Positions 2,978 to 60,289 of a stretch of DNA of 64,000 nucleotides are shown piece after piece. Below the pieces are notes generated by a model. The model had not been told where the DNA came from, ran no database searches, and saw nothing but the letters and a program-made list of their open reading frames with translations. Position 1 is the stretch's first letter. Every line of letters starts with the position of its first letter. The translations under genes were made by a program, and so were the position numbers. The stretch is from Octopus bimaculoides (Eukaryota). The stretch spans positions 64,037,624 through 64,101,623 of the forward strand of contig NC_068984.1 of assembly GCF_001194135.2 (NCBI RefSeq). Direction: 5' to 3'.

Positions 2978-3349
2978 GGCGCAGGAGCGGCTGTGTGGTA
3001 AGTAGCTTGCTTACCAACCACATCGTTCCAGCAAGTGTCTTCTAGTATAGCCTCGGGCCGACCACAGCCTTGTGAGTGGATTTGGTAGACGGAAACTGAA
3101 CGAAGCCCATCGTATATATGTATATATAGATATATATATGTGTGTGTGCGTGTGTCTGTATTTGTCCCCCTAGCATTGCATGACAACCGATGCTGGTGTG
3201 TTTATGTCCCCGTCATATAGCGGTTCGTCAAAAGAGACCGATAGAATAAGTACTAGGCTTACAAAGAATAAGTCCCAGGCTCGATTTGCTCGACTAACGG
3301 CGGTGCTCCAGCATGGCTGCAGTCAAATGACTGAAACAAGTAAAAGAGA
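2978..3349 (+). mobile_element. tRNA-derived OR-like SINE, near full length, B-box region deleted
   Basis: GGCGCAGGAGCGGCTGTGTGGTAAG head, internal (TA)/(TG) tract, 3' end ...GTCAAATGACTGAAACAAGTAAAAGAG; compared with 57768-58288 the GGTTC.AGTCCC segment is missing. Confidence 0.9.
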
Positions 3350-3725
3350 AAAAATAAAAGATATATATGTATGTATATGTATANNNNNNNNNNNNNNNNN
3401 NNNNNNNNNNNNNNNNNNNNNNNNNNNNNNNNNNNNNNNNNNNNNNNNNNNNNNNNNNNNNNNNNNNNNNNNNNNNNNNNNNNNNNNNNNNNNNNNNNNN
3501 NNNNNNNNNNNNNNNNNNNNNNNNNNNNNNNNNNNNNNNNNNNNNNNNNNNATATATATATATATACTAATATTTAACTGAAGTAACAGACTGACTCAAG
3601 ATCTGGGAGTTTCTGCGTTGGCACAGAATCCCTCGGATTTTGAGTCACTGCTACTTCTACTATACCCATATTTTGAGCTCCATTTTTCCTGTTTACACCA
3701 ACTTACCTGCCTGTGTATGTATATA

Positions 3726-7798: not shown

Positions 7799-8254
7799 AC
7801 TGGTGTACGCGATAATTGTCGGGAGTAAAGATGTTCTATTGGAACGCCTTATTACTCTGATATAAGAAGGCAATGTCGTTATACCTGACACAAAAGGTGT
7901 ATTTTCCGTCAGGAAAAATTAAAATAAACTGTCAGCTGGAGGAGGGGGAAATTGTTGGAGGTTGGCGAGAGAGGTTTCGGAGGTTGGTGAAAAAGATAGT
8001 TGGAGGTTGTCTAGAGAGATTGTCGGAGGTGGTCGAGAGAGGTTGTCGTTCACAGAAAATCTATTGTTTCACCGTGAGGAAAGCGCTTTTGAAGTGTTAA
8101 ATGAAATTTGGCAATCGAGGATCGAATCCACACTCTGCCTGCATGTCGAAAAAATAATTATCTACTGTCATGGAGAAAGTGTAACTGTAAAAATGCAAAG
8201 ACGTATGTAGGCATAGATATGTATGAATGAAGAGATTCAAATTAAGGAAGTACA

Positions 8255-9988: not shown

Positions 9989-10826
9989 TTGGGTCATCGC
10001 ATTAATAATGCAGTTTTTTTCAATTGCATGAAATAAAAGTCGGAGGGGAACGGCATAAACTACCTGCATCAGCTTAAAAGTAGGTAGTATTTTATCTTGT
10101 CCTTAGTGTAAGTCTTGAACGGTGCAATTCGATTTTAAGAGTTATTTTTTTAAAGCTAGAATGGAAGTGACGAAGGAGCATGTTCGGAATATTTTGCTTT
10201 ATGAGTTCAACTGAAGCAAAAGCGCAACAGCAGCATATGGGAATCAGACAATAAGCGTAAGCTAATGTCAATGATGATTCCAGGAATTCTGAGCCAGACA
10301 CTACAGCCTAGAAGATGAGCCACGTCTTGAAAGATCTACAGAACTAAACGAAAGCATCCTGCAAACCCTGGTGTAACAAATTCCTATCGTAACTGTTGAA
10401 GAACTTGCAGAGAACCTTGGATTTCGTTATTCAACCATTCATCGACACCTGTGTGCCATCGGAAAAGTCAGCATATGGGTTGCTCACAAACTTTACGTGT
10501 CTAATCTCGTGCAGAGAGTGAATGTGTGCTCTTCCTTGCGTCATGTCTAACGAATGACTCTTACTTGCACCGAAGTTACTGGTGACGAACGATGGGTTCT
10601 CTATAAAAATGTCAAGCATAGAAGACAGTGGCTAGGGAAAGGAGAAACACCGGAACTTAGGCTAAAGAAGGTCTTCAACCATGTAAAGTGTTCTTAACTG
10701 TTTGGTGGGATATGAAATGTTTAGCCCACTCAGAACTTTTAAACCCCAAACCAAACGTAACAAAGGAGATCTACTGCGGGCAGCTTGAGCGGCTTAAGTC
10801 AATGTTAGAAGAAAAACGACGGTCTA
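9989..10826 (+). mobile_element. Mariner (DD34D-type) transposon remnant with 5' TIR and disrupted transposase, 3' truncated
   Basis: TA then TTGGGTCATC TIR-like start; MEVTKEHVRNILLYEFN (ATG 10161), LEDEPR, TIHRHL...WVAHKL, VTGDERWVLYKNVK, KVFLTVWWDMK...IYCGQLERL; stops and frameshifts; no second D or YSPDL motif. Confidence 0.9.
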
Positions 10827-11159
10827 GTCTCAGGATTTTCGAGTCAACATGGGGCGGTTGGCTCCCCTGTCAGTATATATCTGAGCTTTTACTAAAGCTT
10901 CGGGTGTATTTCAACTATTAATTCTAGCAGCCTTAGTCACACTTAGTAACGATTAAATTGTTCCTTTATTCTATCACATTGTGCTTAACTATTTATATTG
11001 ATTTTATATATAAATATATATCGTTTTAAAAATTGTATTATAAAGATATCAACATCCTTTCAGAGACAAAACAAAACATTACGGCTCTGCTCAGTTCTTG
11101 GTCTACTATAAGCTTATGTAACCATTAGTGTCTGCAAGCTCACCTATATTAGCAGTATT

Positions 11160-19270: not shown

Positions 19271-21330
19271 GAGTTAATCGGCTATCCACTCTGTTAAAAT
19301 TGCTGTTCTCTGGCCAAAAACTGAAACCGTTATTATAACATCTATTAGATCATTCCTAAAAATATGAACACATCTACTTGTATCATAATTATTTTCTTTA
19401 TGTTTCTCGGATGAGAAAGTGTACAATGGATGATCGCCTTAAAATAACAAATACTTATTAGAAAAGATATATAAATGAGTCAGATGTCTAAAATATGTTC
19501 AATAAAAAAAAAATCTTTGTTTAAGATGTGTTCACTGTTGACCAAATGTTAATTTGTTAATCTTAGTTATTAAGAGTTATAATTAATGTGGACAAAAACA
19601 AAACTGAATATGAATATTATAATTTTTCAATATTTTTCTTTTATTGTGTGCTTTCAGGACACCAAATGAAGTCAGTGCGAGTTTTAAATGAGTACATTAC
19701 GTAATAAATGTACAGAGTTCAGTAAAGCTCTTTTACGTAGTTATGCATATTTGTAATTCGTTGTGGTTTCGTTATTTGTTTCTCTGTATATTTTTAATCA
19801 TAACATAAAAAATGCCTATTATTATACGAAGTGTTTGCTTCTAGTCCTCACATTCTGGTCATCTTTATTTTCATATTTATGTACACAGACACGCACACAC
19901 ATAATATATATATATATATATANNNNNNNNNNNNNNNNNNNNNNNNNNNNNNNNATATATATTAAAGGTGAACATGCCGTGCGGCCAGATAATGAAATTG
20001 AAAGGGAAAATATTAAGGTGCATTAATGTTTCTTCAACCTTTTGTATTTTATTTAATTTTGATATAAGACCACTTTCCTATTGGTTACAATTATAGAGAT
20101 ATATTTAGTAACATTAGTACTAAAGTCAGTTATTAACTTGAAACACATTTGCATCTGCAACCAGCGAACACTTCATCCAAGTGCGTAATCAACCCCCACC
20201 CTAATAGGCAATATATTTTGCGAGAACCATCATTTGGTTTCAAAGATCAACGCCGCTAATCCCTGCACCCGTTCAAATTAAGATTCACGCAGCACCAATA
20301 TATTTCAAACCGTCAACCAGATGAATAGACAGATTTTACTGACTAAAATTGGACAAGCTAAATTCTGGAAGTTTAATAATAAATAGTATAACGTTGACTC
20401 TACTAAACAGACATTTTAAGGTAGATATACTTGCAAAATTGTATTTCTGAAATATATCAATATTATCTTTTATTGCCATACCATAAATTAATTGAAATTC
20501 AGGGATGTTCTTTCTGCAATCATAAACTACAAATATTGCAGCTGAACCATCAGTTACCTAGCGATTACATAATATTTCAATCCGAGTAGAAGCCTAAAAT
20601 TATGCAGCTCTGTTTACTTTGCATTGAATAATAATTTCGCATATCTCATTCAGCCAGAGTCAAATAAACGCCGACGATATGTTCAGCGTTTACATAACAT
20701 TTTTCAGTTTGAAGACATACATATACATCCATATTAATACCAAGAGAGGGGAAGGGGAGAAAGAGATATCGTTCTTCCAAATAACTTTTAATAGTGTTAC
20801 TCTCTTAGCAAATTCGCATTTTTAATTTTAATCTTCATTACGTTCATGCTATATGCGTATCATTCAATTCTGTAACTACCGAATAATTAAATATTAAATG
20901 TTTTGCGACCATATATAAACCATAAAATAGTCATTAATNNNNNNNNNNATATATTTGAAAAGATTTGTAAAAGTACCACACGAGTAAGTAGATGTTGAAT
21001 GTGAATAAAAATGAAAATGCCACTTTTTAAAAACATTTTTTGGGTGTTTAATTAATTTACATATTTCGGTTTTTTTTTTTTAAACCTTATCAAAAATGAA
21101 TATAATATATGTGAGAAGAGAAAAGGGCTATTTATAAGATAAAATTGAAACTAAAATTAAGAATGACACTCATAGTTTACTGTTATTTCTTGCATGCGCA
21201 CGTGGTCCTTTCATTGAGTTCTGAAAACATGGTAATTCCTACTTGTTGTGCGAGAAGATTACTACTATCTGTTTTAGTAAATTAAATAGTATCAAGAATT
21301 CTAGGAGTGGTTGTAGATGTCGAATAACTA

Positions 21331-21352
21331 GCATCAATAATGATAATAATAA

Positions 21353-21409
<57 letters not shown>

Positions 21410-21928
21410 GCGTCGTCGTGGTGAAGTTGTTCCCCCTATGGTTTTAATAGAAATCGGGTTCTTCGATCCCCTTTGTTTATTTTTTATGAATAACTTGCAA
21501 ATCCACGTATAAATATATTAAAATATATATGAAAGTCTCAGTGTTGCTAGTTTAGAGAATTTAGACATGGTGGGTATTTTCTTATAAAAAATATTTCCTT
21601 GCTAATGCATTCATTTTGGCTAGCATTTTCTTTGAATTTGTATAGTGGAAACGTTGTGAACTTGGGAAATTTGTTGTAAGCACATTCGTCGATGTAGTGG
21701 CTGAGAGCATTAGCAAGGAAATATTTCTTATAAGAAAATACCGACTAAGTCTAAATTCTCTAAACTAGCAACACTTTGACTTTCATATATATTTTAATAT
21801 ATTTATACGTGGATTTGCAAGTTATTCATAAGAAATAAACAAAGGGGATCGAAGAACCCGATTTCTATTAAAACCATAGGGGGAACAACTTCACCACGAC
21901 GACTCCCACCACTACTACTACTACTACA

Positions 21929-21983
<55 letters not shown>

Positions 21984-22003
21984 TTGTTATTATCATTACT
22001 GCT
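21331..22003. repeat. Long inverted repeat (fold-back): arms 21331-21608 and 21707-22003, 98-nt loop
   Basis: About 200 bp of non-microsatellite arm core aligns to its reverse complement with about 8 mismatches; (TAG)n/(CTA)n tracts extend the stem. Confidence 0.97.
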
Positions 22004-23271
22004 GTTATTATATTACTGCCATATAGTCTTAAGGATTTCTAATGTTTTACAATATTACTGTATACGACTTTTCAGTTCGTGTTTACGTGTAAGCGCAAAG
22101 GAACAATCCATTTAATGTTATGATTTCACAAGGGAAATTATTGATTGAAACTGTAATTTTATCTGAATCAAGTAACGACATGGGCATGAGTAATCCAAAT
22201 AAATGGCCTTAAACACTGGAAACAACGGTCGTTGTAGGAGTACGTTAGCATGCTGAACAGCTGTCATATAATTGGCCTTAAGAAGTTGTGAACTTTCTGA
22301 AACCGGATTGAATTAGCTTCGAATGCTGGAATACCATATGTGAATTGTCAGGGGATTATTGATATGAAAGAAATTACACATGGGCTGTGGTAAAAAAACC
22401 CGCTCAAGTACTGGTGTAAGCTTGTTCATTGTTTCGATGTGACAATATTTTGGTACGTTCTACTGCAATGGATTCGTGTTAACTAATGATCTTTCACACT
22501 TTGTATACTTTGACGTAGAAAGGCCTCATATTATGAATTTTCAAATACAAACGACCATCGAAGCAATTTATTGAAGTGATACGATCTCAAAATAAAGGAC
22601 TTTGTACTGATATTAACGTGCCTTTAATGCATATAATTTTCATATTCACTTAAAAAGTTACGTTCATCCTTGTTTACACGCATATCTGCATGCATACATA
22701 TAAAAATAAATGCATAAATATATGTACGTGTATATGTGTGTGTCTGTTTGAATGCATACGCGTATGCTTTTATATATATGTTTGTGTGTATCTGTATGTT
22801 TGTCTGTGTGTTTCTGTATCTGTGTGTGTATGCGTGTGTCTGTGTGTTTATGTATATATGTATGTATGTATTTTTCGGTGTATAAATATATATATCTATA
22901 TTAAATAACATAGAAAACGGAGACTTGGCACATTTAAATAAACTTTTCTTGAAGTGGAAATAAACTGACTTCTAGTGAAGATTGAAACTGAATTTAACTG
23001 CAAAGGAGAGATAATTGTAGGATCGTTAATATAATATCAGTCATATTTTTTCTAAAGAAAATGGGACTTCCTGGGGCGTATCCCCGCCTTATAACCGTCG
23101 TTAAGTTATGCTACCTTTGCTCCAGCAGATATAATTCATAGACATATTATTTACATGCATAAGGAATTGCATGAAAGAACGATCCCGACACGAACTGAGA
23201 GGAAATACAATCAACGAGTGGTAACTGATGAACTTCGTTACGGGAAAAAATTATACTAACTTGTCACAACA

Positions 23272-25498: not shown

Positions 25499-25751
25499 AT
25501 TATATATATATATATATTTGTATTATATATATGTGTGTGTATGTACGCTTACATACTTTCAAACATATGCACACATACACACATACACACACACATACAT
25601 ATATATATTTAAGTTCATTTAGAATGAACGCTTTTTTAAGTACATACGAAGAAGTTATTTTATCATGTAAGCTACAGCCTATTGATACCAACTAGCAGCA
25701 GCAGTTTACTGGGGTTGTACGTAGATGTGCCAATTTTCATTTATTCTTTTA

Positions 25752-26564
25752 GTTTTTATTTGTTTCAGTGATTTGACTGCTGCCATGCAGGAGCAGCACA
25801 TTGAATAGTTTTTAATCGAAATAAATTTACACCGTGACTTATTTTCTAAAGCCTAGTACTTATTCTATCGGTCTCAGTACCAAACCGTAAAATTACGAAG
25901 ACGTAAACACCAAAACTATTCGTCGATCGATGATGGAAGGGGGGGGGGGGCAAATACAGACACAAAGACACACACACACACATATACGAGGTCTGATCAA
26001 TAAATGTCAGGACCGTTGCCATAGTGACGAAGCTAAAGCGTGCAGGGTAAATTCGCTAGGCGCAAACTGACCTTGAACTTGTTGTGCATACGCACTAATT
26101 TAAAAGTTATAACTCACTTCTGCTATTTACAGCAGTATTTGAAAAGAAGGTGTGTAGCGTGTGAAAATCGCATTGTCCATGACAGAGAAAGTTGTCATGG
26201 CGATACCTGCTCAGACGCCTATGCAAAGTTGCAGAAAATGTATGGAATGGAATGTATCAGCTGCACACAGTGTGTGAGTGCTTCAGATGTTTTCACGATG
26301 GCGTGTCTGTAACGTTTGTGCCAAAATTGCTTTCAGTTGAAACTCGGGTTTCAGTTGCATGAGATCTCCTTGATTGTCTCGAAAACAATGTAAACTTTTT
26401 GAAAACTTTGCGTAAGCCCCTGAGCAGGTATCGCAAAGCTTTTCGCAAAATTTGATGCAAATTCTCTGCCTAACTTTCTCTGTCATGATCAAAGTGACGA
26501 TCACATGCTACACACTTCCTTCGTTACTTTTGCAACAGTCGGGATACTTATTGATCAGACCGCG

Positions 26565-26644: not shown

Positions 26645-26862
26645 NNNNNNNNNNNNNNNNNNNNNNNNNNNNNNNNNNNNNNNNNNNNNNNNATATATAT
26701 ATATATATATATACGACGCGCTTCTTCCAGTTCCCGTCTAACAAATCCGCTCACAATACTTTGGATATTAGAAGACACTTGACCAAGGTACCACCTGTGG
26801 GACTGAACTCAGATCGATGTGGTTGGGAAGCTAGCTTCTTACCACACAGCCAGGCCAACACC
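25752..26862 (-). mobile_element. OR-like SINE interrupted by a mariner-derived element
   Basis: 3' SINE half at 25752-25985, 5' half at 26712-26862. Confidence 0.85.
25987..26564. mobile_element. Non-autonomous mariner derivative built from two inverted 5' ends, TA TSD
   Basis: TIRs CG(A/C)GGTCTGATCAATAA, about 46 bp imperfect; TA at 25985-86 and 26565-66; minus strand MTEKVRQRICIKFCEKLCDTCSGAYAK, plus strand GDTCSDAYAKLQKMYG. Confidence 0.85.
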
Positions 26863-27378: not shown

Positions 27379-27970
27379 TACAGATGTGTGTCATTAGAGG
27401 GTAAGTATCTATCTATTTAGTTATTTATTTATGTGTGTATATATATATAAATATATCTATATATATATATATANNNNNNNNNNNNNNNNNNNNNNNNNNN
27501 NNNNNNNNNNNNNNNNNNNNNNNNNNNNNNNNNNNNNNNNNNNNNNNNNNNNNNNNNNNNNNNNNNNNNNNNNNNNNNNNNNNNNNNNNNNNNNNNNNNN
27601 NNNNNNNNNNNNNNNNNNNNNNNNNNNNNNNNNNNNNNNNNNNNNNNNNNNNNNNNNNNNNNNNNNNNNNNNNNNNNNNNNNNNNNNNNNNNNNNNNNNN
27701 NNNNNNNNNNNNNNNNNNNNNNNNNNNNNNNNNNNNNNNNNNNNNNNNNNNNNNNNNNNNNNNNNNNNNNNNNNNNNNNNNNNNNNNNNNNNNNNNNNNN
27801 NNNNNNNNNNNNNNNNNNNNNNNNNNNNNNNNNNNNNNNNNNNNNNNNNNNNNNNNNNNNNNNNNNNNNNNNNNNNNNNNNNNNNNNNNNNNNNNNNNNN
27901 NNNNNNNNNNNNNNNNNNNNNNNNNNNNNNNNNNNNNNNNNNNNNNNNNNNNNNNNNNNNNNNNNNNNNN

Positions 27971-28006
<36 letters not shown>

Positions 28007-28106
28007 AATATTTATATTTATATATATTACATATATTTATATATATACACACATAAATAAATAACTAAATAGATAGATACTTACCCTCTAATGACACACA
28101 TCTGTA
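27379..28106. repeat. ~65-bp perfect inverted repeat flanking (TA)n and an N gap
   Basis: tacagatgtgtgtcattagagggtaagtatctatctatttagttatttatttatgtgtg at 27379 and its reverse complement ending at 28106. Confidence 0.85.
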
Positions 28107-44750: not shown

Positions 44751-44894
44751 GAAAGTTTTACGATTACTTGTAAAGATGACATGGACGGTTTAAGTCACGT
44801 TGTCTCCTGCCATGCTGCACATCTCCCCACTGTCCTATATGTGTGACTTTTATACATACATCTATATTTTGCAAAGCTGGTTATAGGCATATGT

Positions 44895-45135
44895 TCTTTT
44901 ACTAGATTCTATCAATTGACTGCAGACATGCTGGAGCACCGCCTTTTACTAAAATAAATCGACCCCAGAACATATTCTTTGTAAGCCTGGCACTTATTTT
45001 ATCGATCTCTTTGCCGAACCACTAATTTACGGGAACTAAACACACCAGTATCGGTTGTGGGGGAGCCAAACGCAGACACAAAGATACGCACACATGAACA
45101 TATATGCATACACACACACACAAACACACACACAC
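44895..45135 (-). mobile_element. OR-like SINE, 3' half
   Basis: ttgactgcagacatgctggagcaccgcc...ccagtatcggttgtggggg. Confidence 0.85.
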
Positions 45136-46139
45136 GCATATATATAATATTTTACATGATGTTTGGTATGAGTGAATCTGTGTTGTAATAATTACGGTTT
45201 TGATTTCTAAGGATCGTCTTGCACATAAAAGCACACATTATTTTAGGTCATTTAAAAAAATTAACTGTGCCAATCCCAATCATTGATCAGCCTTAATATG
45301 GGATATAATAACCGATATAAATGTTTGAGTATTGTTTCGTGAATTTCCAGTCACACTATACGTTCTACAAAGAGAATTACTAAAGGAAAAATATGGAGAG
45401 AGGTAACATAAAATAGTGAATGATGTGTACCATTACTAAGCTTGGTGGCAGACAAAACACAAGGTAAGAGAGAAAAAATCATAGAGGTAGAGTAAAAGCA
45501 GGAGACGGAGTAAGTGACAGGGTATTTATGGGAAGGGCTATACAAGCAGACACTTTTTTAAATTTTATTTGATATCTAGGTACCGAATACGTTTCTTTTA
45601 AAAAAGTGCATATTCAATTCATTAGTTTATATAGGCACCAATAAATTTAAAACTTCAATTATAATGTTGGCATGTATACCGTATTTTATTATATCACTCA
45701 GCGTAGCAAAAGTGTACTTCCAAAGTTACTCGTCACACGACGAGTATCGCTCAAGTTGCGTCAATAATGGTAGACCTTCACTAGCGTATTTATCTTGATT
45801 TAACGACCATCTTACGAACGATACTATGTGAATGTTTAGGTACGTCTGCCTGTGTACGCATGTATATATGAACATATATTTGTTAAGTTATATATGCATG
45901 TTTGTACAGTTATATATATATGTATCTTTAAATACGTAGCATGGTTTAATATACATAATCTGTGATTATCAGTGATCCTCAGTGGATGGGAATCTCCTTT
46001 AAAGTACAAGAATGAAAAATTGCATATTTGACTTCGTACAAATGGGGTGGGGCTATTTGTAACACAGCACGATTTTCTTGAAATTGATATCGATCAATGC
46101 AATTTGAATTTGACCGTTTTATTTACTACTTCACAAATT

Positions 46140-46690
46140 TCAAAGAGGCAGCCATATAATTCCATTTTGCTCCACCACACAGCCATCGGTATGACGTTAT
46201 CCCCTTCTACTCCAAACCCTGGCTCGGACATCTGCTACAGAAATGCAATATTGACGTTGGTCAGAGAAGACTATAGTATTCCACTGCTGATATCACCAGG
46301 ATATCTGCGAGGATGGGAACCATAGCCGGACGTGGACAAGACAGATTGAAAGATCTCAGCCGGCGCCGAACTGTCTTTGCATGAATGGGTCTGTGGTGAG
46401 TTCCTATGGTCTGCCTAGTTGATTCTGTTGCCCTCCGGAATCAGTCTTGCAAGTACTGTCAGTGCAAGTGGAGCTATTGACGTTCCCTTGTAACTCTCTA
46501 TCGGTCACTGCCTGGATCATTATGCGTACTATTTGTGGCGTTGTATCGTTCCCTCAACCGCTCAAATGTCTGAATACTGCAGTATTAATAATTATCCGTG
46601 GACGTTGAGCAGCATGGAGAATTCCGATGGCGTGTTCCATCTAATTTCGTCTCGGTCTTCGCGTACTTGTTGCATTCGGGGAAACGAATG
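46140..46690 (-). pseudogene. Tc1-family transposase remnant (paired HTH to first catalytic D)
   Basis: EHAIGILHA, RLRERYNATNSTHNDPGSDR*RVT, IHAKTVRRRLRSFNL, IVFSDQRQYCISVADVRARVWSRRG*RHTDGCVVE; frameshifted. Confidence 0.8.
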
Positions 46691-47069
46691 ACAGGCCGGT
46701 AAATAAGGATTCCTATTACACCCAATGAGTCAACGTTTTGCACGTGCATCATGAGTTTCATAAAGATGCGTTCGCGAGCATTACCATGTTCTCGAAAGGT
46801 GAGCGAGTTTAAAACCTACATGCAATCATTCAGATTGCAAAAGAGGGAGGTGTTATCGATTGTGGTCAAATTACATGGAAATGTGATACAATCCATATAA
46901 TTTCAATATCGTGTATGAAACAAATAATCTTTTACAATGCGATTTTTCTTGGAAACCACATGCTGTATTGTTTGGCATTCGCACCAGAAGCTTCAATACG
47001 AACATTTCAGAGAGGGTGACTGTCAATCCGAGGACAGTGCAACATGAGGACATGTATCGAGAGTGATAA

Positions 47070-47649
47070 AAATCAAACATGCAGTCAACATCATGGTGTT
47101 TAGAGTGATCACTAGTGACGACGATGTTAAGCTTCCATTCATATTCCTACACGGCCTCCGACTCAACCCGGATGCCTAATTCAAGTGCCTTACCGAGGCA
47201 GTGTTGCCCTTGGTCAAAGGGTGGCTGCTGGAAGACCCTATGTCTGGCAACAGAACTCTGCACTATGCCACACAAGCAGGCGGACAATTTCTGCGACCAC
47301 ATCGCGCTTAATATCTGGCCACATAACTCCCCAGGCATCAACCCCCTTGATTATTATGTCTGGGGTGCAGTTGAGCGAGAGACCAACAAAACTCCTTGTA
47401 ACACTAAAGATGAACTCTTGGCAGGGATTATGGCACCATTCACCAACTTAAACAAGGAGACCGTCCAGAAGAGCTGCAACAGATTCTGAAGTCATCTGGA
47501 AGCCGTGGTTGAAGCCAATGGCAATTTTATTTAATAAATTCACTATTTAGTATTTCAAAATATTTTTATGTAATTTTAGTAAATATATCTGTTAAAATGA
47601 GATGTTAGTGTTATTTTCATTTAGAGGAGAGTTTACCCACTGCACCTTG
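47070..47649 (+). mobile_element. maT-like (DD37D) Tc1/mariner 3' half with TIR and TA
   Basis: KHAVNIMVFRVITSD, RPYVWQQNSALCHTS, IWPHNSPGINPLDYYVWGAVERET...LEAVVEANG; ends ...ccactgcaccttg followed by TA. Confidence 0.9.
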
Positions 47650-49699: not shown

Positions 49700-50106
49700 A
49701 CCCCTCTCTCTCTCTTCTCTTCCCACGTGACCGGTGTTCGGCCAAGCCTGATCTTTCTTTCTTGACCAGCCCTTGTGCGTACAACACCGATATTCCTCCC
49801 TGTGTCTGTGAAATCTTGTATCCCTGCCAGCTTAATTTAATTCGTTTTAAGTCGAAAGACACTTGTTACGTCCTGTTATTAATTTTATTGTATTTGTGTA
49901 ACAGTGTTCTTTTATTTCCGTCCTCATTTTTGTATACATTCGCTGCTTTCTTCCAAGGAATCTAATGTCCTTAGCTTAGTTTTTCCTTGGGGATGGCCAG
50001 ATTGGAACAATAGCGAGAATAACCAGCCGAAATTGCAAAGATAATCTGGGTCTCGACTGAGGAAAGAAAACTCCGAATGACTTGTCCTTGTTTTCTTTGT
50101 ATCGTC
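49700..50106 (+). mobile_element. Probable Penelope-like LTR fragment
   Basis: GC-richer island with a degenerate CTGAGGA...CCGAAT...GTC motif at 50057-50086. Confidence 0.35.
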
Positions 50107-50116
50107 NNNNNNNNNN

Positions 50117-50175
<59 letters not shown>

Positions 50176-53100
50176 TATATATATATTAATATATATATAT
50201 TATGTATGTTTGTATGTATGAATGTATCTTTCTATGTGCGTATGTATGTATGCATGTATGTATGTACGATTGTCTGTATGTATATTTCTTTAATCAAGAT
50301 GTCATATTGGGTGACTTACGCATTTGCCAATCTTACAGTATACTGAACACAAGGGGTTTTTTGTTACCTTTCTTGCAGTGTGTAGTGCATTTTAAAGGCC
50401 TGTCTTCACGTTTTTCTATTTAATTTTGTGTGATATATTTTAGCCATGCTCTTCGTATCCTAACATTTTGCAGTTTTGTAAGTTATGCATTTGTTCTTCG
50501 TTTCTTATAACACGGATAAAGCTATTCTTGCTTGCTTCTCACTGTAGCTACTTTGTAATCATTTGGAGGGTCCTTTCTGTGAGGAAGGGGATTCATACGT
50601 ATTCAACCTTTTGTAACTAGCCTTCAGCTTTGTTCCTTCAGCTTTGTTCAGAAATTTATACTATTTTGGTTACGTACTTTAACCAGATATTTTTGGTTTG
50701 CGCAAATTACTTGAATATCCACAAATTATTCATTATCATGTTTGTAGTGTCATTGTGTTTTTGCTTTCACATTCCCTTTCCACACCATTGAATTTTTCTC
50801 TTTCTTAATCCATTATGCATCTTTATTGTGATGAATATTTCTGTTCTCTATGCATTACGAATGTGATTGGATTTTTTTTATTATCATTAGTGTGTTTTCC
50901 AATGAGAAACTTTTTCCTTGATGTATATCAAAGAGTCTTATAAAGCATGTATTTGTCAGATTGAGAGCCGTTTTACTTTCCTTACAATTTCTGAAGATCT
51001 TGCCTTTTTGTAGTATTATATTTTTAAATAGATTTAGTTTGTTCTTTTTCATATTTATATCTCGCTATGTAAGCACATGTCTTTTCTCATTTTGACAATC
51101 TTCTATTGTGTGTTTTCTTGTCACTCTTAAGGGACTGAAAAAAAAATAATGTAAGATAGTCAAGTTTGCTTTTCGAGGAAACAATTTCTTGACAAATCTA
51201 GTATCTCAGAATTATTAACGAATGATGTTTGTTTATTTTATCTGTAGCTTCGGGAAACATTCCGTTGGTGTATGTTGATTGATTTTATTATAGTCAAGTC
51301 TTTTCTTATTTTGTTTGCAGTTAATATTTGATTTTCCCCATGGTTGCGTCTGTTTATTCTATTGCGGTCATTGTTATTCTGTTTTCGTTATGCTAACGTA
51401 GAGTTTTCCTCGTGCTACATATTAGAAAGTGTATTTGTTTGGATTTTTCTGGTCATGAGCCACCTATTGTTCTGTTTGTTTTAACGTGTATTTTTTGTTC
51501 TAAGCATGTTTTGGTGGAGGGGCTCTCTATTTTATGCATGTGCATGTGTGTAAGTTTGAAACGCGTATGTGAGATTTATCTTTGCTTAACTCTAAATCAA
51601 CTTTGATTGAAGATACCTATGATTGAAGGCGCTGGATTCCAAAACAGCCAGTATTTTTGACTGAATACATCAAAGATTACATTATTATATATGTTCTTCC
51701 TCCTTTAAGCCGATAATAAGAAAGTTGAGTGGCATTTGGCTGTTATATCTTGCAGCTTAAAAGATACTTTCTCATTCATTTATGAATATTTTATCTCCTA
51801 TATCACCTTCTTTGAAATTGTCTTCATAACATCATTTCTTTGTCATTTTCTGTTTTTGTGTTTGGTGAGTTATATTTCATTGTTTTCTTCGTTTCTTAAT
51901 GTCTATCATTTATAATTGTGTCAATACCGTTGGTTTATTTTCTGCGAGTTGCCAGTGCATGAGTCGATCTATGTTTGGTTTTTAAATATTATAAATATAC
52001 CTACATTTCTTAAGGTATTTAAGTTTTGGCTTTCGATTTTCATTGAGAGTATACTTCGACCTTAGTACTCACATATCGTTTCTTCACAATATTGGGGCAT
52101 AAGAAAGTTGAATAGATTCATTTGCACTGAGGAAGAATAGAAATTTGCTTCGATCAGAAACTTACATTTGTACTCACTATTTGCATATGCAGACGGTCAC
52201 TAGTTTTCTAGGATTCCAGTGCTGTGCTGTGTTGCGAATAGTATAGCTATGTGGTAGGTATACACGCAAGACTCTACATATTTTTATTTGGTTCATCGAT
52301 CCTTTGAAGTGTTCGTTTTAGTAGCATGGACACTAACACTTAAGAGAACGGCACGTTTGACATTGATGTTATACGGGATTTAATGTATGATTTCATTAAG
52401 CTCAAACAACGGTGTCCCTTTACGTCTTTCATCAATGGGTATATATAATTTTCACTCTTTGTATTGTTATTCATGGTTCATCTGATCTGCAAAGTTGCGT
52501 TGTTTTTGTTTTTAAGTTAATACGCATGACTTACTTTTCTATCTCACCTTAAAATTTTGTATTCTATCTAACCTTAAAATTTACATTGACACTTTCTTTT
52601 CTGCATAAGGTAAGCAAAGTATATAACACATCAGATTTCATGTAATATTACAAATTAATTACTTGTTTTTGTTTTTCTTGAAATTTCTTGTCTGAGGTTT
52701 AGTATCACTTTGTTTACAGATATCTTATATCATTCTTCTTTCACCTATTTATATGTCGTGTCGTTTCACCTAATTATTTGTCGTATCGTTAGCATCGTTG
52801 TTGCTTATAATTGTTATTACGATTATAGGCAACATAATCATCAGAATCAACATAGCCAAAATCGTCATTTGATCAAATAATTAACACGCTGGAAAAATGC
52901 ATTGAAATATTTGTTTGAGTGGTTTACACTTCGAGCTCAAATTATACAGAAGTTAACTTTGCCTTTCACCTCAACTGGCGTCGATTACCTAAAGTAAATA
53001 GACTCAAATACTGAGTTTATTTAATCGACTAACACCCTCCCAAAATTTCGACATTTTACTGAGCATGTCACATAGAGTAATTTCATATTCATACATACAC

Positions 53101-53529
53101 CTATGCTACAAACAATGATAAAATGTAACTTACTAGCCACATGTTATTTGAAAATAAGCATTGCAATATCTGGAATGCGAATATAGAAATAAATAATAGT
53201 TTCAAATTTGGACTCAAAACCTCCAATTCATTGATTAAAACGACCCTAGTGATCAACCAAAAGAAATGTCACTGAGCATTTTGTCCGCTGCGGTAACGTT
53301 TGACATTTCGTCGCCTTCATGTAGTTATAAAATAATATATCATAATACATCGAGTAAAAACAGATTCGACCAAAAAATGCAATGAGCTATAAGTAAAACT
53401 CGAACTACGGATAAAGTGTACACAAGACCTTTGTGTTAACCTTATACTAAGACTTCTAAAACTAAAGCATCTAATTTATGCAGTTTAAAGCAGCATATCT
53501 TTCAGGTTGCATGCTGTCATTACATCGAA

Positions 53530-53680
53530 GCAGTATTTAACTGTTACTTTATTTCTATTGTTTCCGGAACGATGAAAGGTAAATTAGTCCTCAGAAAATT
53601 TAATCTCAGAACGTAGAGTCAGAAAAAATGCCGCTAAGTATTTCGGACAGCGGACAGGCTATTCTGCCACCTCGCAATAT
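53530..53680 (-). mobile_element. OK-like SINE
   Basis: gatgaaaggtaaattagtcctcagaaaatttaatctcagaacgtagag. Confidence 0.65.
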
Positions 53681-53784
53681 ATTTTGATCTAACAATTGTG
53701 GCTACATTTACATAAGAGATTCCTCGACAAAGAGATTCTGCTTGCTCACCGCTTAGTTTGGTTTAGTACTGTTCTTTTTATTAA

Positions 53785-53970
53785 AGCAGTGAGCTGGTAC
53801 AACCATTAGTACTCCGGCAATTCGCCTGTCTTTACATTCTGAGTTCAAATTCCGCCGATATCGACTTTATATTTTATCCTTTCAGGGTAGATGAAATAAG
53901 TACCAGTTGATCACTGCGGTCGATTTAAACTACTTACCATTATTTCATGGCCTTGTGCTAAAATTTGAAA
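53785..53970 (+). mobile_element. OK-like SINE
   Basis: gcagtgagctggtacaaccattag...ctgagttcaaattccgccgatatcgacttt...gaaataagtaccagttg. Confidence 0.8.
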
Positions 53971-55369
53971 CCTGATTTTTTTTCCTTTCAAATGTTAATA
54001 CGAGGCCATCAATTTCTTCTAACTCTACACAATTTGAACTTAATATTTCCTATTTTCGTTATTTTCGTTACATTTTTTCGCCGGGCAAACGTGTCCAGCT
54101 ATGTGCATCTTGGATAGTTGATACGCGTTGTGTGTGTGTATGAATGTGAAATTATTCCATTTGGCTTATGCTCAGTTCCAAGACTATTATTTAATGTGCG
54201 CTATATATAATGATAAATCCTTGGATGTTGTTATGCGTTTGTTAGTGTGTTACAAATACTTCCGCAGTATATTTGTTTTAAAGCCCCACATTCTAGTTTT
54301 CCCTGTTTCTGGATGTTTATACGTGGATTGCTTTCTCATTTCTTTCAGAGTTATATATTGTTGTCTGCTGGAATTGATACGTTGAATCGTAAACATTTCT
54401 TTATATAATAGTTTTAAACAAAAGTATGCGGTCAATTTTTATATCATTCCCAATGTCTGCATGAGTTACCAATCCCGAGATAAGTCATTTTGAAGAGTTC
54501 GCTGATATATGTTTACACTGTTTCTTTCTCGGTATTTCATGTTTCTGACGTAATTTACTGTCTATGAAGCGTTCATAACTGTCAATCCTGTACGTCTGTA
54601 AGAACTTACCAGTTGCACAATACGAACTGTTATCTCACATTAATTTCTGTGTCAGATGGTGTAAATTGTATCTATGTGCAGCATTTCTTTCTTATTCTAT
54701 TTTGTCTTGCCAATTCAGTTGACGTTCAATCGAGATTATTAATATAACTTACAATTATAACTACTAGAATATGGTGCCTATTATTTTACTTTTAGTATTT
54801 AACTCTGTTTTATGTATTAATTTAATGTCTATACTTTCCCTTCCTAAACTATTATTTCATTACCGTGTAGTGTTGCCGTCTAGTTTATCAATTCTGTACA
54901 AGTTAATGTAATTCTGTCTTGGTATAATACTCATAACTCGCTTTCTTTATCTAACATAATATTAGTATATTTAAATTAATTTTCCTATTTTCTATACTGT
55001 CTGGCGACGTTTTCTAATCCGAATGTCATATAAATGCGTCTCGCGTCTCTTCGCGTTGTTTATAACAGTGATTACAGTTGTTTATCATCCATAGTATACA
55101 GCCGGAAGTCATTCATAAGCAACACATGTTTGATTGATTTCCTACAATATTTCTGTCCGAGTTGGTCTAGTTGAACATGTAGTTTCACAGTCTTAAGGTC
55201 AGACATATAAGAGGCGCTAGGAACTTCCATCACATCATTAATCTAAAACTAATGAGAATTGCAATTTATAATTCTATTTTTATATTTTCAAAATTATGGG
55301 CCATGTATTTATGTCATAACTGATATACATTTTTATGGCTGTTATTCATAATACATTCTGTTATAGGTA

Positions 55370-55550
55370 CTAGGATTAGAATTTGTGCGTAGGGAGCTAG
55401 TTGAGTACATCAGCCCCAGTTCTTGATTGGTATTTATTTCATCGACCCCAAGGGGATGAATGGCAAAGTTGACATCGACGGAATTTGAACTCAGAACGCA
55501 CAACCAACAGAAATGCTGCTAAGCATCAACTCCGCCAGCTCGCCGGCTTA
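55370..55550 (-). mobile_element. OK-like SINE
   Basis: ttggtatttatttcatcgaccccaaggggatgaatggcaaagttgacatcgacggaatttgaactcagaacg. Confidence 0.8.
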
Positions 55551-56989
55551 TAATTGCTGTTAATAACAATGTTGCCGAAACGGTCTATAGCTTTCTGCAG
55601 TTTTCAATTCTGCAGTTTCTCTACGCTATGATAAAATGTTGAGCAGGATTTAATTTGTCTTTTGCATGTTTGTTACGCTTTCCAAAATCAGAATTCGTCG
55701 TCAAAGATATTAATGCAGTTAAGCATTTGTATTCTGTACGCAAACACTTTACGACCGTCTAGATTTGGAGATTATCTGTTATTTAATCTTGAGGATTCAG
55801 ATGTGCTTTCTTTTTGTTTTGTTTTTTTCTGTTGTTGAATCATTTAGGTAACGTTTGTTGTTCTTTCAATTCATCATTAAATACTATTGGTAGATATATT
55901 TATGTGTCGACGTTTAAATAATTCAACTAAACGTTGGAAATTTTATCACATCCTCTTAGGTTCTGCACTTACTGGTTAAAAGATTTTCGTCTGTGACAAT
56001 CCTTAGATGTCCATGCATCCAACAAATATTTCTGCATCTCATTCTTATAGAGCCGCTTAAATTTCCATTTTATTTTTACATAGCCCTTGAGGAAAGCATT
56101 ATCGGGCTATAGTGAAACTTTTTTGTTTGTTCACGTAATCGTTGCTTCTTTCGATAACGAGGGGACTATTAATGATTTAGTGAGGATATCTCCAGGCTTT
56201 CTTTGATTTCATTTTATTCTACATCATTGTAGCCTGTGTATCTTCAACTATTTCCATTTGTATATTTACGCTATTGATTTCATTAGAGATTCAGATATCT
56301 CTTCTTTCATTTTTATGTTTCCATGCATGATTATCACAATGCTAGTGTGCTTTCAAACATTCTCGTATAAATAGCTCTGAGGAACTCTCTTCATATCTTT
56401 GTAACTACGATGGTTGCTACACAGATTATTTGATACATCCTGGTGGTACTTATATTAGCATCAGTTTTCCTAAACTCTACTTCAGCTAGTTTTTAGGCTT
56501 TCTTTTTCATTGCCGTTGGTATTTTATTATTAAATTCTAACCTTAAATGTGTGTGTCAATTATAATATTTTTATATTTATTTCTCACTTAAAACTATTTT
56601 GATACAATCCTATCTTGTTTTCGATTGTTTCTCATATTTCATTTTAATTATATCTCTGTTTCAGATTTTTGCTAAGTTTTCTCTCTGTTTTTCTTATTCT
56701 TTTAGACTAGTTTGTTTCGTTCAACATTTATTTAATTATTGTGCAATGGACTACATGCAACANNNNNNNNNNTCCCTCCGCTAGCAATATATATTGTATA
56801 TAAAGGGTACACCTTCGCACCGATAACCAGCGCAAGATCTGCCTGAGGTTAAACAGTGGTAACAAGAAACAGTAACTTTGATGTGATGAATGACTTTTCT
56901 TGTTGCTTTAGTTACTACTCTGATAATGAAACACATCAAGAAGTGTCAATTCCTGAACTTCAAGAAACCAGCCATTAACAATAGGATAG

Positions 56990-57160
56990 AACTACGCGAA
57001 GCAGGCTGGTTGCTGTAGCTACGACCGTCTACACATGCCACCTTCCTCCTTCCTCTCTTCTCTCTTTTCACCACGAATACGCTTCTGGGCAACAAACGTT
57101 TTCCAACTTCCGCATTTCCGAATGGCCAGATGAAACGGTATTTAACCCGAAATGTAGAAA
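56990..57160. promoter_or_regulatory. CpG-enriched, promoter-like patch with tandem ETS-type motifs
   Basis: About 11 CpGs in 170 bp; ACTTCCG (57106-12) and ATTTCCG (57114-20) beside a polypyrimidine tract; no similarity noticed to the window's repeats. Confidence 0.3.
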
Positions 57161-57767
57161 TACAAGTTAAAATTGCAACTTTTTGTTATGTTTTCAATTT
57201 CTAGTTTAGTTTGTAACTTCTTGCAATGTTCCGACTTTACAGAAATGTTTAATATTTAATTTCATATATATTTGTATGTGTGTGTATGTGCGTGTGTGTG
57301 TGTATGTGTGTGTGTGTGTGTGCGTGTGTGTGTGTGTGTGTGTGTATACGTGTGTGTATGCGTGCGTATGTATCAGAGAGTAAGAGTGAATGCTTGAGAG
57401 ATGAGGTGCGAATGAAAGAGAGAGAATGATAGTCCCCATGACTTTAGAAAAAAGTTATAACAATCATTATTTGTTCGGTGGCCTCGATATTTCTAACTTC
57501 AACAATTTTATTTTTCTGGTTTGAATTTGTCTATTTTGTTTCCGTATGTTGTTTATATTTCAGTTACTTATTTTAAACACTTTAATATGTAAAAATTAAT
57601 TAATTGTGACAGAAGCAGTATTAATACCAAACGGTAATATTCATCCCCACTTAAAAGAAGATGATATGATATAACAGAATAATTACGATAGTTGCCATGA
57701 CAGGTTTTCTCATGAGTAGAATAGGATAAATACTAGCTTTACTATATCTTTTATTTCCTGTGGCTAA

Positions 57768-58288
57768 CTCTTTACTTCTTACAGTCATTTGATTGTGGCC
57801 ATGCTGGAGCACCGCCTTTAGTCGAGGAAATCGACCCCAGGAATTATTCTTTGTAGGCCTAGTACTTATTCTATCGGTCTCTTTTGCCGAACCGCTAAGT
57901 TACGGGGACGTAAACATACCAGCATCGGTTGTCAAGCGATGTTGGGGGGACACACACAGACACACAAACACAGACACACACACACACACACACACACANN
58001 NNNNNNNNNNNNNNNNNNNNNNNNNNNNNNNNNNNNNNNNNNNNNNNNNNNNNNNNNNNNNNNNNNNNNNNNNNNNNNNNNNNNNNNNATATATATATAT
58101 ATACATATATATACACATATATACGACGGGTTTCTTTTCAGTTTCCGTCTACCAAATCCACTCACAAGACTTTGGTCGGCCCGAGGCTATAGTAGAAGAC
58201 GAATGCCCAAGGTGCCACGCAGTGGGATTGAACTCGGAACCATGTCGTTAGTAAGCAAACTACTTACCACACAGCCACTCCTACGCCT
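57768..58288 (-). mobile_element. OR-like SINE, most complete copy (internal N gap)
   Basis: Head AGGCGTAGGAGTGGCTGTGTGGTAAG, B box GGTTCCGAGTTCAATCCC, full 3' tail. Confidence 0.92.
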
Positions 58289-59049
58289 AACTGTTTTTTT
58301 ATTTTCACACATTGCCCGTTTGTTTTGATATTCCCATTTTGTTTCTGTAACTAATATTTTGTTGTTTCGAAAAAGAAATTAAAGCTTCTTTGGTCTTCAG
58401 ATGTTATATGTGCCTCTTGTAATAGACATAATTGTGGGATATCTTAGAGCTGACTCTTTATTTAGATTGTCTTCAATTCATGGGTATCGATTTATATTTC
58501 TCTCTGGAGATAGAGACTTTTGCAAACAGATATTTTTCTTTTGCTCCCTAGGCCTCAAATGTAAAATATTTCATTTTCATACTGGACCGATTGGTACAGA
58601 TATCATTTGTATTTTTGTCATACATTTGACCAAGTAATTCATGGTTGTGTATTAACTTGAGTAACATGAGTGTATTTACTCTTGGAGGTTAATCGACTGT
58701 CAGTTCATAATATATTTAGAAGATATGACAAAGTAACTAAATGGCGATAGTGCTTACTTTCTTAATGTTTCACGCTTCCAGATATGATTTAGTAAATGTC
58801 TCATTATTCTCAATGGCGTTTTATATCGTTTCAGTCAGGTTAATTGTTATTTTCCGAAACCATGAAGCGGCCATGAATATTGTACTTCATCCGCTGTGAT
58901 ACTGTTATTTTTTCTTATATAAAGATTATGTCCTTCTTAGAATAAAAACATTCTCCTGGATTCCACAGTACACAGTTCTTTCTGAAACACGAAAATGAAA
59001 TAATAGTGTGATTATCAGAATCTTTATTTTAAACCAATTTTGCACAGAA

Positions 59050-60257: not shown

Positions 60258-60289
60258 TATTATAATTATTGTCATCATCACTAGCCGTA

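What the first reader, a model, noticed from the sequence alone, without database searches (positions are those of the whole stretch)
21331..22003. Near-perfect 670-bp fold-back with non-repeat-looking arms: hairpin-RNA or ADAR-substrate candidate
Seen: arms 21331-21608 and 21707-22003 pair around a 98-nt loop. The ~200-bp core has about 8 mismatches, with perfect runs of about 70 and 55 bp and most mismatches near the loop. (TAG)n/(CTA)n tracts extend the stem. The arms resemble no SINE or TIR elsewhere in the window and no TSD is apparent. Known: long intramolecular dsRNA feeds Dicer (hpRNA, endo-siRNA) and ADAR, and coleoids show extensive A-to-I editing and many novel miRNAs. Inference: a lineage-specific hairpin-RNA locus, an intronic editing hub, or a palindrome kept homogeneous by arm-to-arm conversion.
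Basis: partly seen in the sequence, partly recalled or inferred. Interest (0 to 1): 0.72.

Follow-up and report, generated by a model that had tools for sequence, protein, structure and literature searches.

The report
Ordinary octopus fold-back inverted repeat
This is a real, roughly 690-bp inverted duplication in non-coding octopus DNA that would fold into a long RNA hairpin if transcribed, but such structures are already known to be abundant in octopus genomes and nothing here shows that this one has a dedicated function.

Summary
Two arms (about 21324-21608 and 21707-22011) pair around a 98-nt spacer. The complex core (204 nt per arm) has 9 substitutions and no indels, with perfect runs of 71 and 54 bp. 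(TAG)18 and (CTA)24 tracts plus degenerate AT-rich triplets extend the arms. It lies in an ungapped stretch of the assembly, and the arms differ too much to be an assembly echo.

The arm, spacer and flanks are single-copy in the window. No target-site duplication, coding potential, Rfam family or tRNA-like part was found.

The window is from Octopus or a close relative: its SINE-like repeat is 82-95% identical to copies in O. vulgaris.

Published work puts this in context. About 0.44% of O. bimaculoides sites have a near-perfect inverted partner within 2 kb, and such dsRNAs are the main ADAR hyper-editing targets. Molluscs show no dedicated endo-siRNA pathway. The window also holds a second, unrelated fold-back.

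The best reading is a young, neutrally decaying inverted duplication. Whether it arose in place or as a palindromic MITE is unresolved. If transcribed, it would be a passive ADAR substrate. Copy number, orthology, transcription and editing could not be tested here. Interest is low.

The parts
21324..21352 (.). Left arm, outermost part: degenerate AT-rich triplets (ATAAC TAG CAT CAA TAA TGA TAA TAA TAA). Homology to the right end fades out here.
   Evidence: Gapped local alignment 21324-21356 versus 21980-22011
21353..21407 (.). Left arm microsatellite, (TAG)18.3, perfect
   Evidence: TRF; regex count
21408..21608 (.). Left arm complex core. It begins with GTN-type triplets (GTG GGC GTC GTC GTG GTG), followed by about 185 nt of AT-rich unique sequence. 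There are stops in all frames.
   Evidence: Ungapped arm alignment: 9 mismatches in 204 nt, no indels; BLAST 96.06% over 203 nt; stop-free stretches of 37 aa or less within the core
21609..21706 (.). Unique 98-nt spacer (the loop), 37% GC, with no residual palindromy
   Evidence: Local self-reverse-complement score of 12, against a shuffle mean of 15.7; unique in the window
21707..21910 (.). Right arm complex core, the reverse complement of 21405-21608
21911..21983 (.). Right arm microsatellite, (ACT/CTA)24.3 with one interruption. It is inverted relative to the left array and 6 units longer.
   Evidence: TRF; the alignment shows the interruption at about 21928
21984..22011 (.). Right arm, outermost degenerate triplets (TAT TGT TAT TAT CAT TAC TGC TGT TAT TAT), the inverted counterpart of 21324-21352

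Best explanation
This is a genuine, evolutionarily young, non-coding inverted duplication (a DNA fold-back) in an Octopus genome, with no dedicated function.

Origin (inferred): about 300 bp was copied once, in reverse orientation, 98 bp away from the original. The copied segment was a compound trinucleotide microsatellite of a type normal for this genome plus about 185-200 bp of unique AT-rich sequence. The likely cause is a replication or repair template switch (fold-back priming).

Since then (shown): the two arms have drifted apart neutrally, with 4.4% substitutions and a 6-unit difference in microsatellite length.

Consequence (inferred from literature): if the region is transcribed, in either direction, the RNA will snap into a nearly perfect duplex of about 200-270 bp. 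It would then be hyper-edited and unwound by ADAR, like thousands of similar loci in octopus. That makes it a passive substrate, not a gene.

Shown here: the structure, its uniqueness in the window, the absence of coding, TSD and RNA-family signals, the divergence pattern, and the taxon.

Inferred: the one-step origin in place, neutrality, and the fate of any transcript.
For: It is real and not due to chance: E=2e-93, fold z=-52, continuous sequence, and arms that differ by 9 substitutions and 6 microsatellite units.

Against a mobile element:
- There is no TSD of 4 bp or more.
- The outer ends fade into degenerate period-3 sequence instead of ending in defined termini.
- The same compound order, (ATN) then (AGC/AGT)n then (GGT/CGT)n, occurs independently at 60230-60590, and long compound triplet tracts occur in O. 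vulgaris L001. The outer arm therefore looks like host microsatellite that was copied along with the rest.
- The two arrays are inverted relative to each other, which rules out insertion into a pre-existing microsatellite.
- There is no other copy in 61 kb of window or 20 kb of O. vulgaris, and no similarity to the mariner/Tc1 remnants in the window.

For neutrality:
- Four transitions and 5 transversions.
- Wobble-compatible changes are split 2:2 between the strands.
- There are stops in all frames and no protein or Pfam hit.

It is an ordinary class of structure:
- The published genome-wide rate in O. bimaculoides is 4.4e-3 of 50-bp sites with a near-perfect inverted partner within 2 kb (PMC5625713).
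- The same kind of metric gives 1.06% for this window and 0.84% for L001.
- A second, unrelated fold-back sits 6 kb away.

Fate of a transcript: hyper-editing concentrates on long, nearly perfect dsRNA from young inverted repeats, and octopus has the strongest signal (PMC5625713, PMC9989829).
Against: - Genome-wide copy number could not be measured. None of the searchable DNA collections contains octopus DNA: the window's own high-copy SINE 22-mer is absent from them. The window plus L001 could only exclude families of tens of thousands of copies.
- Size, AT-richness, a sharp inner boundary and an almost fully palindromic layout are also exactly what palindromic MITEs look like.
- Short TSDs (TA, TTA/TAA) cannot be recognised in these AT-rich period-3 flanks.
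- No outgroup or empty site was available, so an origin in place is inferred and not shown.
- The mismatch excess near the loop (P=0.05) is unexplained.
- Transcription is unknown.
Confidence: 0.4

Rival explanations
1. It is one copy of a palindromic, non-autonomous DNA transposon (a MITE or fold-back element) whose arms make up nearly the whole element. It inserted here and has since decayed. If transcribed, its RNA is a self-folding ADAR substrate, like the palindromic Harbinger-derived repeat of Xenopus.
For: - At about 690 bp it is non-coding and AT-rich (core 33% GC), with long inverted arms, a short unique centre and a sharp inner boundary.
- The genome neighbourhood is rich in class II elements: a mariner Transposase_1 remnant at 10661-10918 and a weak, below-cut-off Tc3-type HTH match at 46264-46440.
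- A second fold-back with TA|CAG termini lies at 27379-28106.
- Structure-based finders report MITEs in O. vulgaris (PMC13282606).
- Palindromic repeats that fold on themselves are documented hyper-editing targets (PMC5625713).
Against: - No TSD of 4 bp or more, and no defined termini. The outer 30-100 bp of each arm is microsatellite or degenerate triplets of a type seen elsewhere as ordinary host sequence.
- No second copy, full or partial, in 61 kb plus 20 kb. This is weak evidence, since it only excludes roughly 30,000 copies or more.
- No similarity to TIRs of the transposase-bearing remnants in the window.
Confidence: 0.35
2. It is a dedicated hairpin-RNA gene. A transcript folds and is diced into endo-siRNAs or miRNA-like small RNAs that silence a target.
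For: The stem length (more than 200 bp) and tightness resemble Drosophila hpRNA loci, and both strands fold with extreme z-scores. The sub-threshold Rfam matches are to long-hairpin plant miRNA models.
Against: - Molluscs, including O. bimaculoides libraries, show no evidence of a dedicated endo-siRNA pathway (PMC12479628).
- The arms match no protein-coding sequence in any frame among 5.8 billion proteins, including the annotated O. vulgaris proteome.
- The Rfam hits reach about 60 bits against gathering scores of 144 and 211. The MIR2630 model matches both strands almost equally, so this is generic stem matching and not homology.
- The stem is far longer than a Drosha/Dicer miRNA precursor.
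- Mismatches show no strand-specific wobble bias.
Confidence: 0.05
3. It is a selected cis-acting ADAR recruitment element (an 'editing hub') inside a gene. It is kept because it boosts or regulates editing of neighbouring exons.
For: Coleoids edit extensively, and long duplexes recruit ADAR and can raise editing nearby (general knowledge; PMC5625713 notes that surrounding regions of palindromic repeats are also edited).
Against: - No exon or annotated gene could be found in the window or within 10 kb either side.
- The arms are diverging at a rate and with a pattern consistent with neutrality.
- There are thousands of equivalent structures in the genome, so the prior for any one being selected is low.
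Confidence: 0.05
4. It is an assembly artefact: a spurious inverted join in a gapped short-read draft, or two dispersed copies of a repeat joined through a shared perfect 71-mer.
For: The window is a draft with 16 N-gaps (2,883 N). The perfect runs of 71 and 54 bp exceed typical k-mer sizes, and a 10-N gap lies 380 bp to the left.
Against: - The fold-back is inside continuous sequence.
- Artefactual palindromes retrace the same k-mers and so have identical arms. Here the arms differ at 9 core positions, in microsatellite length (18 versus 24 units), by an interruption, and in the outer triplets.
- 4.4% is far above plausible allelic divergence.
Confidence: 0.05
5. It is a palindrome whose arms are kept alike by ongoing arm-to-arm gene conversion, or alternatively two independent head-to-head insertions of the same retroposon.
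For: The arms are more alike (96%) than most SINE copies in the window are to each other or to O. vulgaris copies (82-95%). Outward-pointing triplet arrays resemble retroposon tails.
Against: - Conversion-maintained palindromes are over 99.9% identical and kilobases long. Here there is 4.4% divergence with a scattered pattern.
- Two independent insertions would not share exactly the same inner end point (21608/21707).
- The arm has no tRNA-like or Rfam-recognisable head and no other copy in the window.
Confidence: 0.05

Closest known systems
Self-folding palindromic DNA-transposon derivatives, for example the ~200-bp palindromic Harbinger-class repeat of Xenopus tropicalis (the most hyper-edited repeat in that genome; PMC5625713). 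From my own knowledge: C. elegans PAL-type MITEs, human MADE1, zebrafish Angel.
   Same: A short (under 1 kb), non-coding, AT-rich unit that is almost entirely two inverted arms around a short centre. It forms a tight intramolecular duplex without needing a neighbouring inverted copy, and would be a default ADAR target.
   Different: No TSD, no defined termini and no second copy were found. The arm ends are long (TAG)n microsatellites plus degenerate triplets. At about 690 bp with roughly 285-305-bp arms, it is at the large end for such elements.
Neighbouring inverted repeat pairs that form ADAR hyper-editing substrates (inverted Alu pairs in primates; inverted SINE pairs across Metazoa, including octopus; PMC5625713, PMC9989829)
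   Same: Two young, similar, oppositely oriented sequences within 2 kb that would pair in one transcript. The 96% identity fits the published criterion of over 95% identity across at least 40 bp. It is the same genomic class that makes up about 0.44% of O. bimaculoides sites.
   Different: Here the two arms are not recognisable copies of a dispersed repeat family (none elsewhere in the window). They share identical inner end points, which points to one duplication event and not two insertions.
Drosophila hairpin-RNA (hpRNA) loci, which produce Dicer-2/AGO2 endo-siRNAs
   Same: A long, nearly perfect inverted repeat with a short loop, and lineage-specific.
   Different: hpRNAs derive from, and target, protein-coding genes, whereas these arms match no protein. 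The pathway that reads them has not been found in molluscs (PMC12479628). No expression or small-RNA data are available here.
Template-switch or fold-back-priming inverted duplications (replication-based events that create hairpin-forming sequence in one step; own knowledge of the literature on short template switches and de novo hairpins)
   Same: A single event gives two arms with identical end points, a unique spacer and no TSD. Afterwards the arms diverge independently.
   Different: Documented germline template switches are mostly tens of bp. This one would be about 300 bp. No junction microhomology could be identified because the outer junctions lie in microsatellite.
Drosophila Foldback (FB) elements
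   Same: Long inverted arms whose outer parts are built of tandem repeats.
   Different: FB arms consist of 10-31-bp subrepeats over kilobases and belong to a multi-copy family with TSDs. Here there are simple trinucleotide arrays and no evidence of a family.

Membership tests
MITE / palindromic non-autonomous DNA transposon | Terminal inverted repeats | tested here: met
   Arms of about 285 and 305 nt; 94-96% complementary
MITE / palindromic non-autonomous DNA transposon | Target-site duplication flanking defined termini | tested here: not met
   No direct repeat of 4 bp or more at any boundary combination within 21318-21345 / 21998-22025. TSDs of 2-3 bp cannot be assessed in AT-rich triplet flanks. 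The homology fades out with no sharp end.
MITE / palindromic non-autonomous DNA transposon | Multi-copy dispersed family | not testable with these tools
   No other copy in 61 kb of window or 20 kb of O. vulgaris. This only excludes tens of thousands of copies. The DNA collections hold no octopus DNA.
MITE / palindromic non-autonomous DNA transposon | Small (under ~800 bp), non-coding, AT-rich | tested here: met
   About 690 bp; core 33% GC; stops in all frames; no Pfam or protein hits
hpRNA / endo-siRNA locus (Drosophila type) | Long intramolecular duplex in a transcript | tested here: inconclusive
   The duplex is predicted on both strands. Transcription cannot be tested here.
hpRNA / endo-siRNA locus (Drosophila type) | Arms homologous to a target gene | tested here: not met
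   A six-frame composite probe of arms and loop gave 0 hits at E<=0.1 among 5.8 billion proteins, a set that includes O. vulgaris proteins. UTR-derived arms are not excluded.
hpRNA / endo-siRNA locus (Drosophila type) | Dicer-dependent ~21-nt duplex small RNAs loaded into an siRNA Argonaute | not testable with these tools
   No small-RNA data. The literature reports no dedicated endo-siRNA pathway in molluscs (PMC12479628).
Canonical animal miRNA precursor | Hairpin of ~60-80 nt with a ~33-35-bp stem; match to a known family | tested here: not met
   The stem is over 200 bp. Rfam gathering search gave 0 hits. Only sub-threshold, structure-only hits to plant long-hairpin models.
ADAR hyper-editing substrate (inverted-repeat dsRNA) | Near-perfect reverse-oriented partner within 2 kb (>95% identity over >=40 bp; criterion of PMC5625713) | tested here: met
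   423 nt of the fold-back meet an equivalent criterion of at least 39 matches in 40
ADAR hyper-editing substrate (inverted-repeat dsRNA) | Both arms in one transcript; clustered A-to-G RNA-DNA differences | not testable with these tools
   No RNA-seq access; no gene model in the window
Conversion-homogenised palindrome (sex-chromosome type) | Arm identity over 99.9% maintained by gene conversion; kilobase-scale arms | tested here: not met
   95.6% identity over 204 nt; microsatellite arrays of 18 versus 24 units; arms about 0.3 kb

The most novel reading that the evidence does not exclude
The fold-back is a transcribed, lineage-specific long-hairpin locus with a real job in an octopus. It could be a source of Dicer-dependent small RNAs in a phylum thought to lack endo-siRNAs, or a cis element retained because it recruits ADAR to a surrounding neural gene. 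The evidence here does not exclude this, because transcription, small RNAs, editing and conservation could not be examined.
Probability: 0.05. Interest if true: 0.7.

Novelty: new member of a known kind. Interest (0 to 1): 0.2.

Why it matters
As it stands, this matters little. It is one more example of the long, near-perfect inverted repeats that published work already shows to be unusually abundant in octopus genomes and to be the bulk substrate for ADAR hyper-editing.

It has modest value as a clean, datable specimen: 4.4% arm divergence, no indels and a unique spacer. It could help answer how such structures arise in cephalopods, by in-place template switching or by palindromic MITEs.

It would become interesting only if expression data showed phased small RNAs, which would contradict the reported absence of endo-siRNAs in molluscs, or if it were conserved with compensatory changes.

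Tried and rejected
1. Exact-product look-ups of ORFs crossing the loop, the arm, and a Tc1-like remnant: none on record. The collection does not index spurious ORFs of this assembly.

2. A composite six-frame peptide probe of arms and loop against 5.8 billion proteins: 0 hits. This is useful only for excluding an origin in a coding exon.

3. An arm 22-mer in metagenome and viral contig collections: 0 hits. Calibration with the window's own high-copy SINE 22-mer was also 0, so these collections say nothing about copy number.

4. Pfam on arm and loop ORFs: nothing.

5. Rfam:
- Gathering threshold on the whole window: 0 hits.
- E-value mode: only sub-threshold hits to the plant models MIR2630 (both strands) and MIR8562. 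I rejected these as generic long-stem matches.

6. ARAGORN for a tRNA-like SINE head: 0. The GGTTCTTCGATCC plus T-run motif, which looked like a B box and terminator, was not supported.

7. Empty-site or nested-insertion test using flanks: the flanks are unique in the window.

8. Residual palindromy in the spacer: none.

9. Route to the orthologous locus:
- Tc1 remnant to the O. vulgaris locus L001: only TE/SINE matches, not orthologous.
- GC-based and Pfam exon hunt: only transposase remnants.
- A 4,549-aa composite of the +/-10-kb flanks: 0 hits.

10. ENA assembly ERZ21867824 contigs (L002-L004) lack the octopus SINE and were discarded as belonging to another organism.

11. Insertion into a pre-existing microsatellite was rejected because the two arrays are inverted, not direct.

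Full report
**Observation**

- The repeat finder reports arms 21344-21613 and 21702-21971: 270 nt, 94% complementary, 88 nt apart.
- In the single ungapped register (i+j=43315), clean homology stops at 21608/21707, leaving the 98-nt spacer 21609-21706.
- The complex core 21405-21608 versus 21707-21910 has 9 substitutions in 204 nt and no indel. The perfect runs are 71 and 54 nt. BLAST gives 96.06% over 203 nt, E=2e-93 in the window.
- Outside the core lie (TAG)18.3 at 21353-21407 and (CTA/ACT)24.3 at 21911-21983.
- Beyond these lie degenerate AT-rich triplets that still align in inverted orientation, out to about 21324 and 22011.
- The RNA fold of the whole unit gives -462.6 kcal/mol, against -148 +/- 6 for shuffles. 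The opposite strand folds equally well.
- Six of the nine mismatches fall in the inner third of the core, which is only borderline (P=0.052).

**Is it an artefact?**

The window is a gapped draft with 16 N-runs and 2,883 N. The fold-back sits inside continuous sequence between the gaps at 20939-20948 and 26645-26692.

Spurious palindromes retrace the same k-mers and so have identical arms. These arms differ at nine core positions, by six microsatellite units, by an interruption in the right array and in the outer triplets. I put artefact at about 5%.

**Context and organism**

The window is 32% GC and repeat-rich. I found no detectable host exon.
- GC-enriched, non-repetitive stop-free stretches are transposase remnants: mariner Transposase_1 at 10661-10918 (E=3e-12) and a weak, below-cut-off match to a Tc3-type HTH at 46264-46440.
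- A 4,549-aa composite of all clean stop-free stretches within about 10 kb of the fold-back hits nothing in 5.8 billion proteins.
- A Tc1-like remnant at 47109-47486 has an Octopus vulgaris protein as its only named relative.
- The 20 kb of O. vulgaris chromosome around that protein (L001) carries 7-8 copies of the window's SINE-like repeat at 82-95% identity.

So the window is from Octopus or a close relative.

**What the element is not**
- Not coding: there are stops in all frames. No Pfam hit and no protein hit for a six-frame composite of arms and loop.
- Not a known RNA family: Rfam at gathering thresholds finds nothing in the whole window. In permissive mode, only plant long-hairpin miRNA models score, at about 60 bits against cut-offs of 144 and 211. 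MIR2630 matches both strands almost equally, so this is a generic response to any long stem.
- No tRNA-like part.
- The arm, spacer and both flanks are single-copy in the window.
- No target-site duplication of 4 bp or more.
- The two microsatellites are inverted relative to each other, so the element did not simply land in an existing array. The arrays are part of the duplicated arms.

**What could not be tested**

Genome-wide copy number, the orthologous site, transcription, small RNAs and editing were all out of reach.
- The DNA collections contain no octopus DNA. The window's own high-copy repeat 22-mer is absent from them, so the absence of the arm 22-mer means nothing.
- The window plus L001 (about 81 kb) can only exclude families of tens of thousands of copies.

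**Base rate**

Porath et al. (PMC5625713) measured the fraction of random 50-bp sites that have a reverse-oriented partner of over 95% identity and at least 40 bp within 2 kb.
- O. bimaculoides scores 4.4e-3. With Xenopus this is exceptionally high among 19 species, and octopus shows the strongest hyper-editing signal.
- An equivalent metric gives 1.06% for this window (649 of 61,117 nt, of which 423 nt come from this fold-back) and 0.84% for the O. vulgaris sample.
- Roughly one such structure per 64 kb is therefore what this genome is expected to contain.
- The scan also exposed a second, unrelated fold-back only 6 kb away: arms 27379-27473 and 28013-28106, 98% identical, with TA|CAG outer ends and its centre lost in a (TA)n/N gap.

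**Mechanism**

The arms share exact inner end points, a unique spacer and no indels. This argues for one event that made both arms, not two independent insertions. There are two candidates.

(a) An in-place inverted duplication by replication or repair template switching. Points in favour:
- There is no TSD or defined terminus.
- The outer 100 nt of each arm is compound period-3 microsatellite, (ATN), then (AGT)n, then (GTG/GTC). The same kind and order appears as ordinary host sequence at 60230-60590, and similar tracts occur in O. vulgaris.

(b) A palindromic MITE. Points in favour:
- Its size, AT-richness and layout fit.
- The neighbourhood is rich in class II elements.
- The second fold-back has classical termini.
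- MITEs are reported in O. vulgaris (PMC13282606).

I favour (a) at about 0.40 over (b) at about 0.35. The choice rests on negative evidence and would be settled by a single BLAST against the genome.

Arm divergence of 4.4%, about 2% per arm, is younger than the TE expansion waves at Jukes-Cantor 0.09 and 0.2 that PMC13282606 cites for O. bimaculoides.

**Function**

The substitution pattern looks neutral: 4 transitions, 5 transversions, and wobble-compatible changes split 2:2 between the strands.
- The hpRNA/siRNA reading is disfavoured. A 32-species mollusc survey that included O. bimaculoides small-RNA libraries found no evidence of a dedicated endo-siRNA pathway (PMC12479628), and there is no homology to a target gene.
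- The conversion-homogenised palindrome reading fails on the 4.4% divergence.
- The ADAR reading survives only in its generic form. If either strand is transcribed, a duplex this long and tight would be hyper-edited and unwound by default. This is shown for young inverted repeats across Metazoa and for self-folding palindromic repeats in frog (PMC5625713, PMC9989829).
- Nothing indicates a selected 'hub'.

**Verdict**

This is a confirmed, clean but ordinary structure: a new member of a known kind. Interest is about 0.2. The residual novel reading, a functional long hairpin in a mollusc, is about 5% likely.

Noticed in passing
window 27379-28106: A second, unrelated fold-back. Its arms are 27379-27473 and 28013-28106, with 91 of 93 positions identical. 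The outer ends read TA|CAGATGTGTGTCATTAGAGGG, like Tc1/mariner termini. The inner ends run into (TA)n and a 497-N assembly gap, so the centre is unassembled. It is likely a MITE or an internally deleted Tc1/mariner element.
   Followed up: partly
window 60230-60590: A ~360-bp compound trinucleotide tract running (ATT/ATC), then (AGC)n, (AGT)21, (GGT/CGT)n, then mixed AGC/AGT. It lies between SINE-like sequences. The order of triplet types matches the outer ends of the fold-back arms, which suggests a recurrent microsatellite 'gradient' in this genome.
   Followed up: partly
window ~60-260, 3031-3370 (rc), 25740-25910, 44880-45122, 57765-57998, 60608-60954: Copies of a SINE-like interspersed repeat with the core CAGTCATTTGACTGCGGCCATGCTGGAGCACCGCC. 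The same family occurs 7-8 times in 20 kb of O. vulgaris chromosome OX597814.1 at 82-95% identity. Neither Rfam nor ARAGORN recognises a tRNA-like part in any copy.
   Followed up: partly
window 10377-10918, 26037-26507, 46032-47486: Decayed Tc1/mariner-type transposase remnants: Pfam Transposase_1 at 10661-10918; a weak, below-cut-off match to a Tc3-type HTH at 46264-46440; and, by eye only, a mariner N-terminal-like ORF at 26286-26507 on the minus strand, which gave no Pfam hit. The 47109-47486 fragment is 79% identical over its matched part to an O. vulgaris 'hypothetical predicted protein'.
   Followed up: partly
window 50001-60000: A sustained negative AT skew (-0.13 to -0.27 in 2-kb bins), meaning T excess on the + strand over about 10 kb. 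This is unlike the rest of the window. The cause was not examined (T-rich repeats, or a transcription-associated bias).
   Followed up: no
L002-L004 (ENA ERZ21867824 contigs): Long contigs (0.28-0.49 Mb) from an ENA 'metagenome' assembly carry Tc1-like remnants 60-72% identical to the window's, but lack the octopus SINE. They appear to be animal host DNA with prokaryote-style ORF calls. The organism was not identified.
   Followed up: no
window 7861-8207: A GC-enriched (43%) stretch with internally repeated peptide-like motifs (…GGWRERFRRLVKKIVGGCLERLSEVVERG…). It has no Pfam match and may be a short tandem repeat.
   Followed up: no
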